The position numbers and the translations under genes were made by a program. Shown here one piece after another: positions 10,400-51,400 of a stretch of 64,000 nucleotides of DNA. The DNA lies in the IMG/VR virus record IMGVR_UViG_3300044712_001255, positions 248,001 through 312,000 of that record; one strand, written 5' to 3'. Below the pieces are notes generated by a model. It saw nothing but the letters and a program-made list of their open reading frames with translations, searched no databases and had not been told where the DNA came from. Each line of letters starts with the position of its first letter. Positions within the stretch are counted from its first letter, which is position 1.

Positions 10400-10582
10400 C
10401 CGGATAGTGGTGGGTTCCACTGCGTAAGTGAATGAAGTAACTATGCTAATGCGACGCTTGGGTTCGAGTCCCAACAGGTAACAAATGGGCATAATGGTAA
10501 CGGTTACTGGTTACGCAAAACAAGTTGACTACGAGGGCAAATGTTAGCGTAATCTACTGGGTTCGATTCCCGATAGTCCGCA
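10400..10582 (+). ncRNA. structured RNA with two T-arm-like hairpins
   Basis: GGTTCGAGTCC and GGTTCGATTCC hairpins, GTAAC-TATGC/GCATA-GTTAC and TTACGC/GCGTAA helices; no cloverleaf. Confidence 0.45.
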
Positions 10583-10998: not shown

Positions 10999-11151
10999 GC
11001 CCGAGACCTGGGTTCGAGTCCCAGTTGGACGGTGGCGCTTGAGAGCAAGTCAACGTGCTGATCACACGGAGACATCGCTAGTACGTAAGTCGCCGGCAAT
11101 TGGCTGATCACCTTTTGTCTTGTCCAGTAGTTTAGCGGTCAGAACACGGGC
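10999..11151 (+). ncRNA. circularly permuted tRNA-like RNA, copy 2 (Asp-like scaffold)
   Basis: 3' half 10999-11032 (GCCCG, T arm, TTGGACG-G) precedes 5' half 11121-11151 (TGTCCAG, D arm GTTT/GAAC, CGGGC). Confidence 0.8.
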
Positions 11152-11860: not shown

Positions 11861-11967
11861 CTCTTTTGCATTGTGGTCGTGTCTCGACGGGGACCAGCGA
11901 TAGGTTCAAATCCTATCATAAAATTTGGTAGCTGAGCGTTGGTTCGAATCCAACGGGTGTAAAAGAG
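11861..11967 (+). ncRNA. closed RNA with two tandem T arms
   Basis: 10-bp closing stem CTCTTTTGCA/TGTAAAAGAG; ATAGG-TTCAAAT-CCTAT and GTTGG-TTCGAAT-CCAAC. Confidence 0.6.
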
Positions 11968-23364: not shown

Positions 23365-23371
23365 TTTTTTA

Positions 23372-23400
23372 GTGTACTTGTGTGCGAGACATGATAACCT
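23372..23400 (+). promoter_or_regulatory. putative promoter GTGTAC-17-TAACCT for second RNA cluster
   Basis: Recurrent motif. Confidence 0.6.
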
Positions 23401-23406
23401 ATACTC

Positions 23407-23540
23407 AAGGTGCTGCGGCATCTACTTCAGGATGGTAAACATGCTACGCCAACTCAACACGATACAGAGAACACATACCGGCTTGATGCTGGTGTGCGGC
23501 CTGTCGTGTTTAGGTTTGCCATCCAGCGTCGGCCTCCTTA
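23407..23540 (+). ncRNA. rod-shaped structured RNA (6S-like?)
   Basis: GGATGGTAAAC/GTTTGCCATCC, AACACGA-CAG/CTG-TCGTGTT, CACATACCGGC/GCTGGTGTG nested helices. Confidence 0.35.
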
Positions 23541-23600
23541 CCCCCTCAGGGGTAAGATTTAGTTGCTGACATAGGCCCCTCGTCCTGGGCTAGAAGTTTT

Positions 23601-23670
23601 CAAAGCGTAGCTCAAAGAGAGCGGCTGATCGTGGAGATCAGTGATGCAGAATCGGTACCTGCCGCTTTGA
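23601..23670 (+). ncRNA. tRNA-shaped RNA with non-canonical anticodon and T arms
   Basis: CAAAGCG/CGCTTTG-A, GCTC/GAGC D stem, GCTGATC-GTGGA-GATCAGT. Confidence 0.5.
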
Positions 23671-23722
23671 CGGATCGAAAGAAAGTTGTTTCGATCTTGT
23701 TCATTGACAATCTGCATTCTTT

Positions 23723-23869: not shown

Positions 23870-24466
23870 TTGATAGAATTGATCGATATGAAGAAATGTG
23901 ATGCATCTCTTGAAGAGATTCAAAGATTCGTAAAAGAATCAACATGTATTTCGCAAGTTGTCATTGCGCTCAAATTACCGTGTAATGCGAAGTACGCAGA
24001 ATTTGTTCGTCAATTGATCTCACAACACGCACTTGACACATCTCACTTCACACGCAAACGAAAATATGAACGAATCAGAAAAGCTTGTCCTGTTTGTCAA
24101 ACAACGTTTGAAACATACGTAAATCATCCTAAATACAACAAAACAACGTGTTCGTGTGCTTGCGCAAATTCATTCTTTCGTAGTGGAAATAACAACCCAA
24201 ACACAAAGCATGACGAAGATAAGGGAACGTGGATGTACACGTTATGTTGGAAAAATCATGAACATCAATGCGTCATTTGTGGTGAACAAAACATCGTAGC
24301 TGTTCACCATTTTAATGGTAAACATGATGACAATCGACCAGAGAATTTGGTACCTATGTGTCCAACACATCATCAATATTGGCACTCTAAATTTCGATCA
24401 CTCATAGAGGAAAAAGTAAACACATATGTAGAAAATTGGATCTCAACACATCAGAGATTAGTGTAG
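23870..24466 (+). CDS. HNH endonuclease
   Basis: CPVC, CSCAC, CVIC..AVHH.N..H.DN..NLVPMCPTHH; stop lies inside downstream tRNA. Confidence 0.7.
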   Translation: MIELIDMKKCDASLEEIQRFVKESTCISQVVIALKLPCNAKYAEFVRQLISQHALDTSHFTRKRKYERIRKACPVCQTTFETYVNHPKYNKTTCSCACANSFFRSGNNNPNTKHDEDKGTWMYTLCWKNHEHQCVICGEQNIVAVHHFNGKHDDNRPENLVPMCPTHHQYWHSKFRSLIEEKVNTYVENWISTHQRLV

Positions 24467-24522
24467 TGGTTGCACACCTGCCTTGGGGACAGGTTGTCGG
24501 AGTTCGATTCTCCGATCTCTGA
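24452..24522 (+). tRNA. tRNA-Pro(TGG)
   Basis: Loop CTTGGGG, C1-G72, A73. Confidence 0.85.
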
Positions 24523-24523
24523 C

Positions 24524-24770
24524 GCACACGTGGTGGAAAGGCAGACACAACATTAAAAGCGTAAGGTGCTTGTTGGCGTTGATTCGCCAGCATCAAGCAT
24601 GGATCGAGGGAGCGTAACGCGGTGCGGAAAACGGCCAACGGGTACGACAATCGTGAAGTGTGCAGCAGGTTTGCGGATGCACCGGAACGGCGCTCGAGGG
24701 TGTCGTAAGGGAAGCGAGCTTATCCTAAAAGCTGCAGATGTGGATGCGGGTTCGAGTCCCGCCGTGCGCA
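24524..24770 (+). ncRNA. tRNA scaffold with 182-nt structured insert replacing the anticodon loop
   Basis: Leu-type D arm GTG-GAAAGGCAGA-CAC, ACATT/GATGT stem, T arm GCGGG-TTCGAGT-CCCGC, A73. Confidence 0.7.
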
Positions 24771-24773
24771 AAT

Positions 24774-24844
24774 CAGGGACAGGTGTAATGGTTGCACCTC
24801 TGTTTCGGGAACAGATAGTCGGAGTTCGATTCTCCGGTCCTTGA
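24774..24844 (+). tRNA. tRNA-Pro(CGG)
   Basis: TCTGT-TTCGGGA-ACAGA. Confidence 0.88.
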
Positions 24845-25886: not shown

Positions 25887-26043
25887 GATCAAGTAACCAG
25901 ATCTTTTGATCCGATGTTGATAACGTAAGTCAACTTTTTGGCGGAACTGGCAGACGCGCCGGCCTAAGAAACTGGCATGATCATTTGAACAAAATTCTTG
26001 TGATCTATGTGGGTTCAAGTCCCACAAGAGAAGGTGAACGATC
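25887..26043 (+). ncRNA. tRNA mimic on AGUA/GAA helix, unit 1 (Leu AAG-like core)
   Basis: GATC-A-AGTA-ACC ... GGT-GAA-C-GATC enclosing D arm, loop CTAAGAA, long variable arm, T arm. Confidence 0.7.
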
Positions 26044-26121: not shown

Positions 26122-26212
26122 GAGCGCGGTAACTACGTTCGTTGTCATGGTTTGACAAGGAATTCTTTCAAAAATTCCTATTTTGGTTCGAATCCAAATA
26201 GGTGAAGCGCTC
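26122..26212 (+). ncRNA. tRNA mimic on GGUA/GAA helix, unit 2 (Glu-like core)
   Basis: GAGCGC-GGTA-ACT ... GGT-GAA-GCGCTC; D, anticodon-like (8-nt loop) and T arms. Confidence 0.7.
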
Positions 26213-26838: not shown

Positions 26839-26921
26839 GCTGTCGTGGTGGAATTAGGCAGACACATCAGGTTGAGAGCCTGACGGTTTATACCATGCAG
26901 GTTCGACTCCTGTCGACAGCA
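26839..26921 (+). tRNA. tRNA-Leu(GAG)
   Basis: TCAGG-TTGAGAG-CCTGA, long variable arm. Confidence 0.92.
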
Positions 26922-27014: not shown

Positions 27015-27557
27015 ATGGCAAATCAATATTCTAAGTTTAAATGGGAAGATGAACGTCCATTTGAAGATCTGGGCCGAGTAAAACAACGTAACTTCCTAAT
27101 AAAAGAAGCGAATTTTAGTTGTTCTGCTTGCGGCTTCAATAAGTCAAGAGAAGACGGACGATCAATTTTAGAAATTCATCACATCGATGGGAATCATCAA
27201 AATAATGTTCGATCAAATTTGAAAGTGTTATGTCCAAATTGCCATGCCATGACGTTAAAATTCAGATTTTACGGAAAATCACATCTATCGTCAAAAGATC
27301 ATAGAGCTCGAACTATCAATAAAGAGCTCAGAATAAAACGTAAATTAGCGAGAGAACAACGCCAATCAAAAATTAGAGATCAGTTTTGTGAAACGATATT
27401 GTTATGTCATGAGACAAAAGAAATTGATTTCTCTAAATTTGGATGGGTATTACGTCTATCTGAGATGTTTGGCGTAACGCACCAAGCAATTGGTAGACGT
27501 ATAAGAAAATTGATGCCAGAATTCTACAATGATCATTGCTTCAAAAGGAAAGCATAA
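27015..27557 (+). CDS. HNH endonuclease
   Basis: CSAC...LEIHHIDGNHQNN..NLKVLCPNCH. Confidence 0.78.
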   Translation: MANQYSKFKWEDERPFEDLGRVKQRNFLIKEANFSCSACGFNKSREDGRSILEIHHIDGNHQNNVRSNLKVLCPNCHAMTLKFRFYGKSHLSSKDHRARTINKELRIKRKLAREQRQSKIRDQFCETILLCHETKEIDFSKFGWVLRLSEMFGVTHQAIGRRIRKLMPEFYNDHCFKRKA

Positions 27558-29338: not shown

Positions 29339-29411
29339 CTCTTCGTAGTTCAGTGGATAGAACATCGCTTTCCTAAAGCGAATGTCATGTGTTCAAATCA
29401 CATCGAAGAGA
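29339..29411 (+). tRNA. tRNA-Arg(CCT)
   Basis: TCGCT-TTCCTAA-AGCGA. Confidence 0.9.
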
Positions 29412-48403: not shown

Positions 48404-51400
48404 TTAGTATTTGCGCAAAGATCCAACGACTTGTTGAACCAACAGAACGTCTCTGATCCTTGAGCGATTGCTTTCACCAACATACATCTCTTCAAAATGA
48501 TACTGCAACTTGTGACGTTCCAACATGTGAGATTCAATCAAGAAGTTTGTGCCCTTGAAATTACTCTTATGTGGAATCAGCTGCTCGATAAATGTGCCAA
48601 TGGCGACATCGAACCACCGGAAGAAATCAAAGAAAGCTCTAAAGTTGATTTTTTCCTGTACCTGCGTAAAGTATATGTTACGCAGCTGCTCAAGATCAGG
48701 ATAATCTGATGAGAACGCAAGCTCTGGCGCACCGATTGCTTCATTCAACTTCTCGAACGTTGAAAAGATCGTGATGATATCGCGATTCAATGAATCAATT
48801 AGCGAAAATTCAACAGAGAATTTTGAACTATCAGTTGGCTTTTCAGCTGGTGGGACTTCATACACGGGGGCAAATTGCGTCCATGGATTCATTTCAACTA
48901 CGTCTAATTCCTTTGCGCTTCTAATTCTAATCTTATCAGCTGACACAGCTTCATCAAAATACGGCGACAAGTAGCTGTACCCAAACGTTTGTCCACCAAG
49001 CGCAAGAGTTCCCACGGTAAATTGAGATCCCGTGAGGTGGTTTCCATTAAGACTAAGATCCCACATTATTACGGACCCTGTTGGGAGCCCGAGTGAGGCA
49101 GTTGCGAGCGGATAACGGTAATCGTCTTGTTGCCAGATTGAGAATAACCTAAGTCGTTCCCAAGAACCAGAACTTGTTGTGTTGAAGTTGTAGTTGATCC
49201 ATGGATCGTCCACACCGACGCTCTTGTAGTTACGAACGTGTTCTTTGAATTCTATTTCTGTCTGAGACTTCGTCCAGAATCTAACGTTTGACATTCTTCC
49301 GACAAACATTGTTGTTCGCGCTACAGAATCTACAGAGTCATCATTAAGGAATGCGCCGCCAGTTGTAGTTGACATTGACGTATTACCCCAACGTAATGAA
49401 CTACCTGAAACGTTATCTGACGACTTTGTTTTCAGAACGTTATCTTCTGTATAGAAGACTTCTGAGAAGTACGATGACGTCATCGTCAACTTTGTGATGT
49501 CGCCAAAATCATTTTGTGCAGCTCGCAAAAAATACGTACCAGATGCAGTACCAGATTCTGATGAGTCGATGTATCCAAATGAAACATTCCACGGATCACC
49601 ATCAAATAATCCATCGCCAGATAGATTTAGAGGCATTGCAAGCAGCGGAGAATTTGCGCTGTTACCGGGACGTGCGTATAATGTGAGTTTTGAGCCATTC
49701 TCAACAACAAGGTTCATTATTGTGCGTTCGCTATTCGGAGTAGAACCTGTGATGATGAAGCGTACCAATGATTGCTGATCTTCGAATGAATATTGTCGTT
49801 TCTGTATTGCCAGCGGAAAATGATAGATCGCTTCATACGTCCAGGACGCTCGTGTCAATAACCCATCATTCGCGTTATTTGAGATTCCATGTGGTGGATG
49901 AACGTCTTTTTGCACAAAAGTTCCATACGGCGTCGGAAATCCTGGTTCGATACGAGACGCCGTAAGAAATGGTGTAGTGACTATTGATCCACTGGACATG
50001 TTTATCATTAGTCCAGATTCAATGTGACGTTCTCTAGACGCGTCTAACATTTGTTCTGTTGGACCACCATATTCTCGAATACGAACGCTGTTGTTGGGAT
50101 CAATACCAAGCGCTCTTAAAAATGCTTCAATTGCGTATCGAGTTCCCTTAGATCGTAGGATTTTTGGGAGGTAAATTAGCACCCTTTTCAACAATTCGTC
50201 CTGTACAGTGCGTAATGCTATTGGTCCTGTGTTGATTTCATCATCTATGTTTTCTGCGTAGATGTATTGATCAATTGTTGATTCGTTGAAAAGTGGAGGT
50301 AAGTCTACACCCCATGTACGAGCAACGTCAATCAAAAATGGATTTGGTACTGTGTCATGTGTATCATGAGATACACTTCGCATGTTTGCAAATTGATCGA
50401 TTAGAATTTTGATGTTATCGAAAAACTTTGCATACACGTATAAGAACGACAAGATCAGGTGCGTTGAACCCATTTCGCCTTGTCCGGGAATACCTTCGCC
50501 ACCATACGCATTATTTGCGTCACCCAATTGCGTTTTAAATCCTTCGTATGATTGCCCTTGCAAAATGAGATTTTCTGGCACGAGCTTCGTGATGATGTTG
50601 GGATTTGCTGCATCATACAGTGATGCACTTTGTAGTAGCGTTTCATTCAATGACACAATTGATGGATACGCTGGGAACAAAACAGGCGATAGCTCATCAC
50701 GCTCATAGATCATCAATGATGAAGCTTCATCATCAACGCTCTTACGTAGAGTGCCGACAAAAGCGTTTACTAATGCATGTAAGCTATTTCCAGAGCTATC
50801 AAGCACAATAGCATTCACGTACCCGTTGTCGGGAACCAACGGAGGTGGTGGCTCATTGAACTTATAGTAGAGCTTCAAATCGTCAGACGCTGTAATCAAT
50901 TTTTGATGATATGCTTGTTGCTGTGCAATTGTCCTAACGCTGTGAAAGAATCGAAACTCGTCAAGGCTTCCTGAGAATGTTTGCGTCGGCGTAATTACTG
51001 ACGTGCCATTTATCCACGATGATCCCGACGCAATCGTTAGGGGTGACGTTGTTAACGCAAGGTTTCCAATGACGGGCGTTGTTCGTGATGTCGCCAATAA
51101 TGAAAAATTCTGGTAAAGCGCAGCCAACGCAGGCCCATTGTCTTTGTTCAATACTGCGGCGATGTGCGTGAACGTACCTTTTGGAATTTCCCCTGTTGCA
51201 AATACGCTTGTTGATCCTGAAACTACATTGAAACACAATGTTGCAGCAGCAGAACTAACTGACGGTTCCAAATACAAGGAGAATCCATTGCCATCATTTT
51301 GTTTTTGGCAAATCACCTGTAAATCATTCGCAACTGGTGCAACAAATACATGTGTCTCAACACTAAATGATTTATCGCCGGGATTCATTATCCCGAGACC

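What the first reader, a model, noticed from the sequence alone, without database searches (positions are those of the whole stretch)
24524..24770. tRNA with a 182-nt branched domain in place of the anticodon loop
Acceptor, Leu-type D arm, 5-bp anticodon stem (24550-54/24737-41), short variable loop, perfect T arm and A73 are present, but 24555-24736 forms nested helices (GTGCTTG/CAAGCAT, TTGGCG/CGCCAG, GGAT/ATCC, GAGCG/CGCTC, GGTGC/GCACC). The architecture is tmRNA-like (tRNA domain on a long helix), yet there is no G3:U70, a D stem is present, and no ssrA-type tag is readable. I see no group I P7 core or BHB motif. It may be a new chimeric RNA class or a protein-spliced intron handled by the phage ligase.
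Basis: partly seen in the sequence, partly recalled or inferred. Interest (0 to 1): 0.8.

Follow-up and report, generated by a model that had tools for sequence, protein, structure and literature searches.

The report
Oversized chimeric tRNA-like gene in phage
A giant soil phage carries, inside its array of about 48 tRNA genes, a 247-base gene with the ends of a tRNA wrapped around a conserved internal domain of about 180 bases; it matches no known RNA family, and it most likely makes a stable tRNA-like RNA of unknown job rather than a tmRNA or a self-splicing intron.

Summary
The tRNA-like shell is real. It has an acceptor stem (6 of 7 pairs, A3·C70), a tRNA-Leu-type D arm, a 5-bp stem, a perfect T arm and A73, and it sits 1-3 nt from the flanking tRNA-Pro genes.

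ARAGORN therefore calls 24690-24770 a weak tRNA-Arg(CCU).

No Rfam family matches: not tmRNA, group I or Y RNA. The phage has its own tmRNA elsewhere, and I found no splicing endonuclease or RtcB.

Only one homologue was found (L032, 91.5% identical, no indels).
- Neighbouring genes are only about 80% identical, and 42% of third codon positions differ, so the whole unit, insert included, looks constrained.
- Its substitutions keep or improve the T stem and outer acceptor stem.
- Homology starts and stops at the tRNA-like ends.

Removing the insert at the anticodon loop never gives U33. Removing 24550-24716 gives a good 80-nt class-II-like tRNA(CCU), but no mechanism for that is known.

Overall folding is no better than shuffled sequence; only the 24566-24600 hairpin stands out.

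Best reading: a stable chimeric tRNA-like non-coding RNA, like T4 rnaC and three other tRNA-like genes in this genome. Function unknown; no RNA data were available.

The parts
24524..24530 (+). Outer acceptor stem, 5' strand (GCACACG)
   Evidence: It pairs 6 of 7 with 24763-69 in the window and 7 of 7 in L032. Pairing probability is at least 0.9 in both sequences. Positions 3-5 differ from the paralogous tRNA-Leu(GAG) in a way that fits this 3' strand.
24533..24548 (+). tRNA-Leu-type D arm (GTGG-AAAGGCAG-ACAC)
   Evidence: The same 16-mer lies in tRNA-Leu genes in the IMG/VR loci I scanned. It is nearly identical to the window's tRNA-Leu(GAG) at 26839. The two L032 changes both fall in the loop.
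24550..24554 (+). 5' strand of the 5-bp stem in the anticodon-stem position (ACATT)
   Evidence: It pairs with 24737-41 in both sequences and is invariant, so there is no covariation either way.
24555..24736 (+). Internal domain of 182 nt (the 'insert')
   Evidence: 14 substitutions and no indels against L032, while flanking genes are about 80% identical. No Rfam hit. No paralogue in the phage genome. No relative in IMG/VR, GenBank phages or GTDB genomes.
24566..24600 (+). Stable hairpin with a 3-nt bulge; the apical part looks like a T arm missing one loop base (TGGCG-TTGATT-CGCCA)
   Evidence: z = -3.97 in the window and -3.51 in L032. The C46U change keeps the pair and A72C falls in the bulge.
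24610..24695 (+). Central branched domain closed by GAGCGT/GCGCTC and CGGTGCG/TGCACC(G)G
   Evidence: The closing helices appear in the minimum-energy fold of both sequences and in the RNAalifold consensus. 8 of the 14 insert substitutions lie here; the two that fall in predicted inner pairs (G·U to A-U, U·G to U-A) keep pairing. The z-score is not significant.
24703..24717 (+). Second, D-arm-like hairpin (TCGT-AAGGGAA-GCGA)
   Evidence: Taken from the Rfam tRNA alignment of 24694-24770. The only change in L032 turns U·G into C-G.
24717..24733 (+). Anticodon-arm-like hairpin AGCTT-ATCCTAA-AAGCT (U33, anticodon CCT, A37)
   Evidence: ARAGORN drawing. Invariant in L032. No tRNA in IMG/VR shares this arm.
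24737..24741 (+). 3' strand of the 5-bp stem (GATGT)
24746..24762 (+). Canonical T arm (GCGGG-TTCGAGT-CCCGC)
   Evidence: The G-C pair becomes A-U in L032, a compensatory double change.
24763..24770 (+). Acceptor stem 3' strand (CGTGCGC) plus discriminator A; no CCA is encoded
   Evidence: C244T in L032 repairs the A3·C70 mismatch. Homology with L032 ends exactly here.
24690..24770 (+). Nested alternative: the ARAGORN tRNA-Arg(CCT) call of 81 nt, using GCGCTCG as its 5' acceptor strand
   Evidence: It passes only the default ARAGORN threshold, scores 17.8 bits against the Rfam cut-off of 29, and was not found in an excerpt of L032.

Best explanation
24524-24770 is one gene for a stable, unspliced, chimeric tRNA-like non-coding RNA of about 247 nt.

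Shown:
- The gene was assembled from tRNA parts. The 5' acceptor strand and D arm are a paralogue of the phage's tRNA-Leu(GAG). The T arm and 3' strand resemble its tRNA-Asn. These close around an internal domain of about 180 nt with no detectable relative.
- That domain itself ends in a D-like hairpin and an anticodon-arm-like hairpin with loop AUCCUAA.
- The whole unit, insert included, is conserved in the one related phage found.

Inferred:
- It is transcribed as part of the polycistronic tRNA array.
- The acceptor/T-arm module lets RNase P and the 3'-end and CCA-adding enzymes cut it out and stabilise it like a tRNA. [quoted passage not shown]
- The internal domain is the working part. It could be a binding platform or decoy that displays a tRNA-Arg(CCU)-like anticodon stem-loop to some tRNA-directed enzyme of host or phage.
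- It is not a decoding tRNA, a tmRNA or a known ribozyme.
For: 1. A discrete tRNA-slot unit.
- It lies 1 nt after tRNA-Pro(TGG) and 3 nt before tRNA-Pro(CGG).
- In L032 the two flanking Pro genes are different genes (63% and 69% identity), yet the unit is 91.5% identical and homology begins and ends at the outer tRNA-like ends.
- An X3 contig also loses similarity just upstream, at 24521.

2. Constraint over the full length.
- 21 substitutions and no indels in 247 nt. Adjacent genes are 80% identical, and 42.5% of third codon positions differ right up to the stop codon.
- All three codon phases of the only open frame are conserved, so the constraint is not protein coding.

3. Substitutions respect the tRNA shell.
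- T stem G-C to A-U.
- Acceptor A·C to A-U, and G-C to G·U.
- The D-loop and T-loop changes leave the GG and TTCRA motifs intact.

4. The outer 5' strand differs from its Leu(GAG) paralogue at exactly positions 3-5, in the direction that pairs with this 3' strand.

5. No route to a canonical tRNA through the anticodon loop, no known ribozyme or intron family, and no splicing enzymes.

6. The same phage encodes other non-decoding cloverleaf RNAs:
- 103, 136 and 75 nt at G000 243421-243793.
- 70 nt at window 23601-23670, with compensatory changes in L032.
- T4 rnaC has the same plan: acceptor-like stem, canonical T arm, anticodon-like hairpin and a long internal hairpin.
Against: - There is only one homologue, 8.5% diverged, so no helix of the insert has real covariation support. 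The pair-preserving changes in the insert were partly found with a structure predicted from the same two sequences.
- Folding energy is not better than shuffles.
- No RNA data: no RNA run was listed. Expression, ends and absence of splicing are therefore all inferred.
- The conservation could instead reflect recent lateral exchange of the cassette in a mosaic array.
- The decoy or platform function is pure inference.
- A deletion of 24550-24716 would give a tRNA that scores better in ARAGORN than about half of the real tRNAs of the array. An unspliced RNA does not explain that.
Confidence: 0.45

Rival explanations
1. It is an interrupted tRNA gene whose intervening sequence is removed to give a decoding tRNA. 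The best candidate removes 24550-24716 (167 nt, between tRNA positions 26 and 27). That joins the Leu-type acceptor and D arm to the CCU anticodon arm, a 12-nt variable region and the T arm, giving an 80-nt class-II-like tRNA. A weaker candidate is an anticodon-loop intron leaving the loop AAAAGCA, a Leu(AAG)-like tRNA.
For: - Among 4,662 tested deletions, the products 1-26 + 194-247 and their immediate neighbours are the only ones to pass ARAGORN at 115% of threshold. They do so in both the window and L032. About half of the array's bona fide tRNAs fail at that level.
- Oversized tRNAs with inserts occur in other phages: the Lak megaphage 'enigmatic introns', one of which is predicted to hold a tRNA, and L019, which has 37- and 27-nt inserts in class-II tRNAs with the same D arm.
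- The CA to TG change at 24735-36 keeps two possible pairs of a mini variable stem.
Against: - No known bacterial or phage mechanism splices at position 26/27.
- The junctions lack the group I U·G and terminal-G combination (my reading of the junctions found).
- No group I or II hit; no EndA or RtcB; no intron-less allele anywhere.
- The anticodon-loop version gives A33 in place of U33.
- The variable region has no real stem.
- A canonical tRNA-Arg(CCT) already exists at 29339.
- Passive introns are usually poorly conserved, whereas this insert is as conserved as the exons.
Confidence: 0.17
2. It is a non-functional recombination scar. A tRNA-Leu 5' fragment, unrelated DNA and a decayed tRNA were joined by homing-endonuclease-driven or illegitimate recombination. 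It looks conserved only because the cassette moved between the two phage lineages recently.
For: - The array is mosaic, with neighbouring Pro genes swapped.
- HNH endonuclease genes sit in it, one directly upstream and absent from L032.
- The window holds several orphan T arms and tRNA fragments.
- The 5' part is a paralogue of Leu(GAG) and the 3' part resembles Asn.
- There is a weak resemblance between the two 5' halves and a shared TAAAAGC repeat.
- Folding is unremarkable.
- The element is young and absent from relatives at about 50% protein identity.
Against: - There are no indels, and divergence is 8% against 42% at neighbouring third codon positions, with the drop starting at the stop codon.
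- tRNA-Val next door is already 12% diverged with compensatory changes, so the region is not uniformly young.
- Stem substitutions are all pair-preserving, including one double compensatory change.
- The 5' acceptor strand has adapted to its distant partner.
- Homology edges coincide with the tRNA-like ends in two independent comparisons.
Confidence: 0.2
3. The gene is just the 81-nt tRNA-Arg(CCU) that ARAGORN calls (24690-24770). The upstream 166 nt is a conserved leader that happens to contain a tRNA-Leu 5' fragment.
For: - ARAGORN calls it in the window and in L032.
- GCGCTCG pairs 6 of 7 with the 3' strand at a tRNA-like distance.
- The anticodon arm and T arm are perfect.
Against: - It is the lowest-scoring class of ARAGORN call and scores 17.8 bits against the Rfam cut-off of 29.
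- It has a poor D arm with no U8 or A14.
- In L032 its acceptor stem falls to 4 Watson-Crick pairs, 2 G·U and 1 mismatch, while the outer stem becomes perfect.
- ARAGORN finds nothing in the L032 excerpt.
- GCGCTC is also the 3' strand of the helix that closes the central domain.
- Homology with L032 and X3 starts at 24521-24, not inside the 'leader'.
Confidence: 0.1
4. It is a tmRNA-like or otherwise aminoacylated trans-acting RNA, or a degenerate group I intron in a tRNA.
For: It has a tRNA-like domain on a helix, A73 and a Leu-type D arm, which are LeuRS identity features in E. coli (my own knowledge). tRNA group I introns exist in soil bacteria (my own knowledge).
Against: - No tmRNA or group I hit at E<=10, and ARAGORN's tmRNA search finds nothing.
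- The phage has its own tmRNA.
- There is no G3·U70.
- No splice-site pair gives a canonical loop.
Confidence: 0.03

Closest known systems
Bacteriophage T4 species 1 RNA (rnaC, 139 nt; AF158101 70908-71046) and species 2 RNA (rnaD)
   Same: Both are encoded inside a phage tRNA cluster next to a homing endonuclease gene. Both have an acceptor-like terminal stem, a canonical T arm (CCGGG-TTCGAAT-CCCGG), an anticodon-like hairpin and a long extra internal hairpin. Neither is in any Rfam family. The biological role is unknown (PMC3014915).
   Different: There is no sequence similarity. T4 rnaC is about half the size, its expansion replaces the D arm, and it folds far better than shuffles (z = -4.6). 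The present RNA keeps a normal Leu-type D arm and carries a branched 180-nt domain containing a second D-like hairpin and an anticodon-like hairpin.
'Enigmatic introns' in tRNA genes of Lak megaphages and other huge phages (Devoto et al., bioRxiv 10.1101/356790)
   Same: These are oversized putative tRNAs in very large phage genomes. One insert is itself predicted to hold a tRNA. The inserts are highly conserved between genomes, match no Rfam class, and have no known mechanism. L019 in IMG/VR shows the same thing in Leu-type tRNAs with an identical D arm.
   Different: For those inserts, removal at or next to the anticodon loop gives a canonical tRNA, and intron-less alleles exist. The two L019 examples I could measure are 27 and 37 nt. 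Here the insert is 167-182 nt, no intron-less allele was found, and removal at the anticodon loop never gives U33.
tmRNA (RF00023)
   Same: A tRNA-like acceptor and T-arm domain closes a large internal domain, and it is encoded by phages too.
   Different: The feature has no G3·U70, no tag reading frame and no pseudoknot signature, and it does have a D stem. Rfam and ARAGORN are negative. A genuine tmRNA lies elsewhere in this genome.
Group I introns in bacterial tRNA anticodon loops (Azoarcus tRNA-Ile, Agrobacterium tRNA-Arg(CCU), cyanobacterial tRNA-Leu(UAA))
   Same: Both are inserts of about 200 nt in a tRNA gene. The soil setting and the CCU and Leu themes also match.
   Different: No RF00028 hit even at E<=10. 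No 5' U·G with terminal-G splice-site pair gives a canonical anticodon loop. I saw no recognisable P7/J8-7 core by inspection. The CCU anticodon lies at the 3' end of the insert, not at its 5' edge.
Bacterial Y-RNA-like YrlA (RF02553)
   Same: A non-coding RNA with a tRNA-mimicking module, also found in phages.
   Different: It scores only 14.5 bits against a gathering score of 69, and only over the T arm. The phage has no Ro/TROVE protein. In YrlA the tRNA mimic is internal, whereas here it forms the termini.

Membership tests
tmRNA | G3·U70 in the acceptor stem (alanine identity) | tested here: not met
   Position 3:70 is A·C in the window and A-U in L032.
tmRNA | Tag reading frame with a resume codon and pseudoknots; match to the tmRNA models | tested here: not met
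   ARAGORN's tmRNA search at an 80% threshold finds nothing. There is no RF00023 hit at E<=10. The real phage tmRNA is at G000 49473-49828.
Group I intron | Match to the conserved P3-P9 core (RF00028) | tested here: not met
   No hit at the gathering score or at E<=10 on 521 nt.
Group I intron | 5' exon ending in U (U·G in P1) and intron ending in G, with the ligated exons forming a canonical tRNA | tested here: not met
   All deletions were enumerated. The canonical products (junctions 23/191 to 27/195) follow A or C, not U. Junctions after U30 or U31 give loops without U33.
Archaeal/eukaryal protein-spliced tRNA intron | Bulge-helix-bulge at the exon-intron borders, and a splicing endonuclease available | tested here: not met
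   A symmetric 3x3 internal loop (AAA/GCA) lies next to the stem, not staggered 3-nt bulges. PF01974 and RtcB are absent from the phage record, which is 86% complete. Host enzymes could not be tested.
Canonical tRNA (RF00005) | Score above the gathering threshold for a contiguous cloverleaf | tested here: not met
   The full unit gives no hit. The nested 24694-24770 scores 17.8 bits against 29. ARAGORN accepts 24690-24770 only at its default threshold.
Phage tRNA-cluster stable tRNA-like RNAs (T4 rnaC type) | Encoded within a phage tRNA array; terminal acceptor-like stem plus canonical T arm; non-tRNA internal expansion | tested here: met
   for the feature; for T4 rnaC.
Phage tRNA-cluster stable tRNA-like RNAs (T4 rnaC type) | Accumulates as a stable RNA processed like a tRNA | not testable with these tools
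   No RNA run was listed for this sequence.
Phage tRNA-cluster stable tRNA-like RNAs (T4 rnaC type) | Sequence or structure homology to rnaC or rnaD | tested here: not met
   A blastn search of GenBank phages, which include T4, finds no match. The resemblance is architectural only.
Huge-phage tRNAs with 'enigmatic introns' (Lak type) | Oversized tRNA-like gene whose insert is conserved and unclassifiable, sometimes holding a predicted tRNA | tested here: met
   definition taken.
Huge-phage tRNAs with 'enigmatic introns' (Lak type) | Removal of the insert at or next to the anticodon loop restores a canonical tRNA; insert-free alleles exist | tested here: not met
   No product has U33. ARAGORN's intron mode finds none. 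No insert-free allele was found in relatives or in IMG/VR.
YrlA / Y RNA | Match to the model and a Ro (TROVE) partner | tested here: not met
   14.5 bits against 69. No TROVE domain in the genome.

The most novel reading that the evidence does not exclude
The 167-182-nt domain is a new kind of catalytic or protein-independent intervening sequence. It would be excised from a non-canonical site (between tRNA positions 26 and 27) to release a class-II-type tRNA with Leu-like body features and a CCU anticodon, which could read AGG with an unexpected amino acid. Alternatively, the full-length RNA is charged (A73, Leu-type D arm) and acts as a new trans-acting, tmRNA-like adaptor.
Probability: 0.06. 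Interest if true: 0.9.

Novelty: new variant of a known kind. Interest (0 to 1): 0.45.

Why it matters
Huge phages carry tens of tRNA genes. Among them sit oversized or non-canonical tRNA-like genes that annotation tools skip or mislabel, and that nobody has explained. T4 rnaC and rnaD remain without a known role, and the Lak 'introns' were described as enigmatic.

This locus is an unusually large and clean example:
- It has a complete tRNA shell.
- It has a nested anticodon arm.
- Its insert looks constrained as strongly as the tRNA parts.
- It sits in a genome that holds several further tRNA-like RNAs.

If the RNA is stable, it is a candidate decoy or platform in the phage-host conflict over tRNAs. 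If it is spliced, it would need an unknown mechanism.

Practically, the ARAGORN label 'tRNA-Arg(CCT)' for 24690-24770 should not be taken at face value.

Tried and rejected
Searches for relatives that found nothing useful:
- Rfam at the gathering score and at E<=10: nothing but weak T-arm-driven hits.
- ARAGORN in intron mode and tmRNA mode: nothing new.
- GenBank phages by megablast and blastn: no match.
- IMG/VR exact-pattern scans:
  - T arm plus acceptor: 0 hits.
  - D arm: 30 contigs; those examined are ordinary tRNA-Leu genes, plus the insert-bearing tRNAs of L019.
  - Anticodon arm: 3 chance hits inside coding genes.
  - A 17-mer from the insert: 0 hits.
- GTDB genomes with a 19-mer from the insert: 18 chance hits of 19-25 nt.
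- The single metagenome scan went on the neighbour protein. It returned only distant relatives that lack the element.
- Contig look-ups from neighbour proteins gave one true homologue, L032, and four relatives without the element.
- Translating the open frame across the feature to fish for spurious ORFs in other contigs found only the window's own protein.
- No paralogue of the insert in the phage genome.

Other tests:
- RNA evidence: no RNA run was listed. The DNA runs hold the same phage at low depth, with one SNP (24565 G>A) and no deletion joints inside the feature.
- Protein coding: the + frame is open in both sequences, but only 7 third-position changes occur where about 24 would be expected. 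I rejected it.
- Transposon-like insertion: a TAAAAGC direct repeat flanks 172 nt, but there are no terminal inverted repeats and deleting between the repeats gives a 10-nt loop. I rejected it.
- Duplication of the 5' half: the similarity is weak (p about 0.03). I kept it only as a possible origin.
- Thermodynamic ensembles of the two sequences agree only on the outer acceptor stem, so I do not offer a firm secondary structure for the insert.
- No promoter or terminator lies next to the feature on the + strand.

Full report
**Setting.** The window is part of a 324-kb IMG/VR phage record from a rhizosphere metagenome (G000:C1:248001-312000). It holds an array of about 48 tRNA genes (45 by ARAGORN and 46 Rfam tRNA hits). 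The array is interspersed with HNH endonuclease genes and with SLOG and NADAR genes, and a T4 Rnl1-like RNA ligase gene follows it. The feature fills the slot between tRNA-Pro(TGG), which ends at 24523, and tRNA-Pro(CGG), which starts at 24774.

**The observation.**
- The acceptor stem has 6 of 7 pairs, with an A3·C70 mismatch.
- The D arm is of tRNA-Leu type. The same 16-mer lies in tRNA-Leu genes in the IMG/VR loci I scanned.
- Positions 6-26 equal the window's own tRNA-Leu(GAG) at 26839 but for a 2-nt indel, while acceptor positions 3-5 differ in the direction that fits the distant 3' strand.
- A complementary 7-mer somewhere within 400 nt upstream of a T arm is expected by chance about 0.6 times. 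One that sits exactly in front of U8-G9 and a D arm, 1 nt after the preceding tRNA, is not.
- The named helices of the insert exist and are nested, but overall folding does not beat shuffles: z = -0.32 in the window and -0.93 in the homologue. The central domain is also unremarkable, at -0.46 and -1.45. Only the hairpin 24566-24600 stands out, at -3.97 and -3.51.

The 3' end of the insert contains a D-arm-like hairpin (24703-17) and a perfect anticodon-arm hairpin, AGCTT-ATCCTAA-AAGCT (24717-33). A second strand, GCGCTCG (24690-96), also pairs 6 of 7 with the 3' acceptor strand. ARAGORN therefore reports a nested 81-nt tRNA-Arg(CCT). That call is marginal:
- It passes only the default threshold.
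- It scores 17.8 bits in Rfam against a cut-off of 29.
- It has a poor D arm.

**Known families.**
- Rfam gives nothing for the insert, even at E<=10 on a 521-nt search space. There is no tmRNA, group I, ribozyme or riboswitch hit, and the YrlA and Y RNA hits are weak and confined to the T arm.
- ARAGORN's tmRNA and intron modes are negative.
- The phage has a normal tmRNA elsewhere, with tag ANDNATVLRAAA.
- The phage record has no splicing endonuclease, RtcB or Ro.

**Relatives.**
- One homologue was found, through the neighbouring 251-aa protein: L032:3551-3797, on a 3.9-kb JGI contig.
- It is 226/247 identical with no indels.
- More distant relatives (neighbour protein 45-54% identical) have ordinary Pro, Gly and Phe tRNAs in that region and nothing like the insert.
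- IMG/VR, GenBank phages and GTDB genomes hold no relative of the insert.
- The phage genome holds no second copy.

**Is the insert conserved?** Yes, as far as one comparison can show.
- Flanking genes are about 80% identical.
- In the adjacent ORF 42.5% of third codon positions differ, and that level holds right up to the stop codon.
- The feature differs at 8.5% of positions. The part between 24550 and 24716 differs at 7.2%.
- The two neighbouring Pro tRNA genes have been replaced by different genes (63% and 69% identity). tRNA-Val is 88% identical with compensatory changes.
- Homology with L032 starts 3 nt before 24524 and ends at 24770. An X3 contig likewise loses similarity upstream of 24521. 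The unit therefore behaves as one cassette whose edges are the outer tRNA-like ends.

**Substitution pattern**.
- T stem: G-C to A-U, a double compensatory change.
- Outer acceptor: A·C to A-U, and G-C to G·U.
- Loop changes leave the D-loop GG and the T-loop TTCRA intact.
- In the insert, C46U keeps a pair. Three changes turn wobble pairs into Watson-Crick pairs (idx 111, 139, 183).
- Part of this agreement is circular, because the consensus was predicted from the same two sequences. Counting only helices defined beforehand, 6 of 7 changes preserve pairing (p about 0.06).
- Variation is concentrated in 24618-24684 (8 of 67 positions). In 24685-24734, which includes the D-like and anticodon-like hairpins, only 1 of 50 positions differs.

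**Could it be spliced?** I enumerated 4,662 deletions and scored the products with ARAGORN.
- The best products join 1-26 to 194-247, removing 24550-24716. This gives an 80-nt class-II-like tRNA with a Leu-type body, anticodon CCU and a 12-nt variable region.
- These pass 115% of threshold in both phages, a level at which about half of the array's real tRNAs fail.
- That is intriguing, but I know of no mechanism for such a site in bacteria or their phages, and the junctions do not fit group I rules.
- Phage tRNAs with shorter inserts do exist: the Lak megaphages and L019, which has 37- and 27-nt inserts and the same D arm.

**Context within the genome.** The phage encodes several other non-decoding cloverleaf RNAs that neither Rfam nor ARAGORN reports:
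- Three in tandem at G000 243421-243793 (103, 136 and 75 nt). The 136-nt one has an expanded D arm, a long variable arm and an anticodon-like loop without U33.
- One at G000 115176-115254.
- A 70-nt one at window 23601-23670, whose anticodon-like stem changed with compensation in L032.

T4 rnaC, fetched for comparison, has the same plan of acceptor-like stem, canonical T arm, anticodon-like hairpin and a long internal hairpin. It too is absent from Rfam and has no known role.

**Verdict.**
- Most likely (0.45) this is a stable, unspliced, chimeric tRNA-like RNA. It would be excised from the array transcript by the tRNA-processing machinery, with the internal domain as the functional part.
- Rivals: an interrupted tRNA that is spliced by an unknown route (0.17); a recombination relic that only looks conserved because of recent cassette exchange (0.20); the nested tRNA-Arg(CCU) with a leader (0.10); tmRNA-like or group I (0.03).
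- Without RNA data and with two sequences only, the secondary structure of the insert and its function remain open.

Noticed in passing
L064:422-794 (G000 243421-243793, about 4.3 kb upstream of the window): Three tandem non-canonical tRNA-like genes of 103, 136 and 75 nt. All have 7-bp acceptor stems and T arms. The 136-nt one has an expanded D arm, a long variable arm and an anticodon-like loop ACACAGC without U33. Neither ARAGORN nor Rfam reports any of them.
   Followed up: partly
window 23601-23670 (and all of 23365-23722): A 70-nt cloverleaf without canonical D or T loops. Its anticodon-like stem differs from L032:3222-3291 through compensatory changes. The whole 358-nt non-coding stretch is 92.5% identical to L032, against about 80% for the genes, and part of it recurs in distant relatives (L066, L067).
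   Followed up: partly
G000 49473-49828 and G000 313007-313079 (complement); both outside the window: The phage encodes its own tmRNA (tag ANDNATVLRAAA) and a suppressor-type tRNA with anticodon TTA. The second hints at possible TAA read-through or recoding.
   Followed up: no
window 10458-10474, 11008-11024, 26009-26025, 26182-26198: Canonical T arms outside any called tRNA, with no convincing 5' acceptor partner. 25931-26036 looks like a tRNA-Leu relative with a variable arm of about 33 nt. These may be decayed or atypical tRNA-like elements in the array.
   Followed up: partly
window 23870-24466 and 27015-27557: HNH endonuclease genes lie inside the tRNA array. The first is absent from L032, where a different tRNA-Pro(TGG) sits instead. 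Both tRNA-Pro genes flanking the feature are replaced in L032 (63% and 69% identity), which shows gene-by-gene mosaicism of the array.
   Followed up: partly
L019:3558-3684 and L019:3775-3893 (complement; IMGVR_UViG_3300028837_001110): An unrelated phage contig carries two class-II tRNAs with inserts of 37 and 27 nt at or near the anticodon loop: a tRNA-Leu(AAG) with the insert at 37/38, and a second that ARAGORN labels Phe(AAA). They are invisible to ARAGORN's default mode. The first has exactly the D arm of the feature.
   Followed up: partly
window 11871-11963: The 93-nt 'tRNA-Leu(CAA)' call by ARAGORN passes only the default threshold and has no Rfam tRNA hit. It is probably spurious or another atypical element.
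   Followed up: no
G000 115176-115254: A 79-nt cloverleaf with a perfect 7-bp acceptor stem and a T arm (CGCAG-TTCAACT-CTGCG), far from the tRNA array and not called by ARAGORN.
   Followed up: no
window 24565: The same G-to-A difference is seen in L032 and in a low-depth contig of the independent run X3. That contig's sequence diverges upstream of 24521, so at least three variants of the cassette context exist in soil samples.
   Followed up: partly
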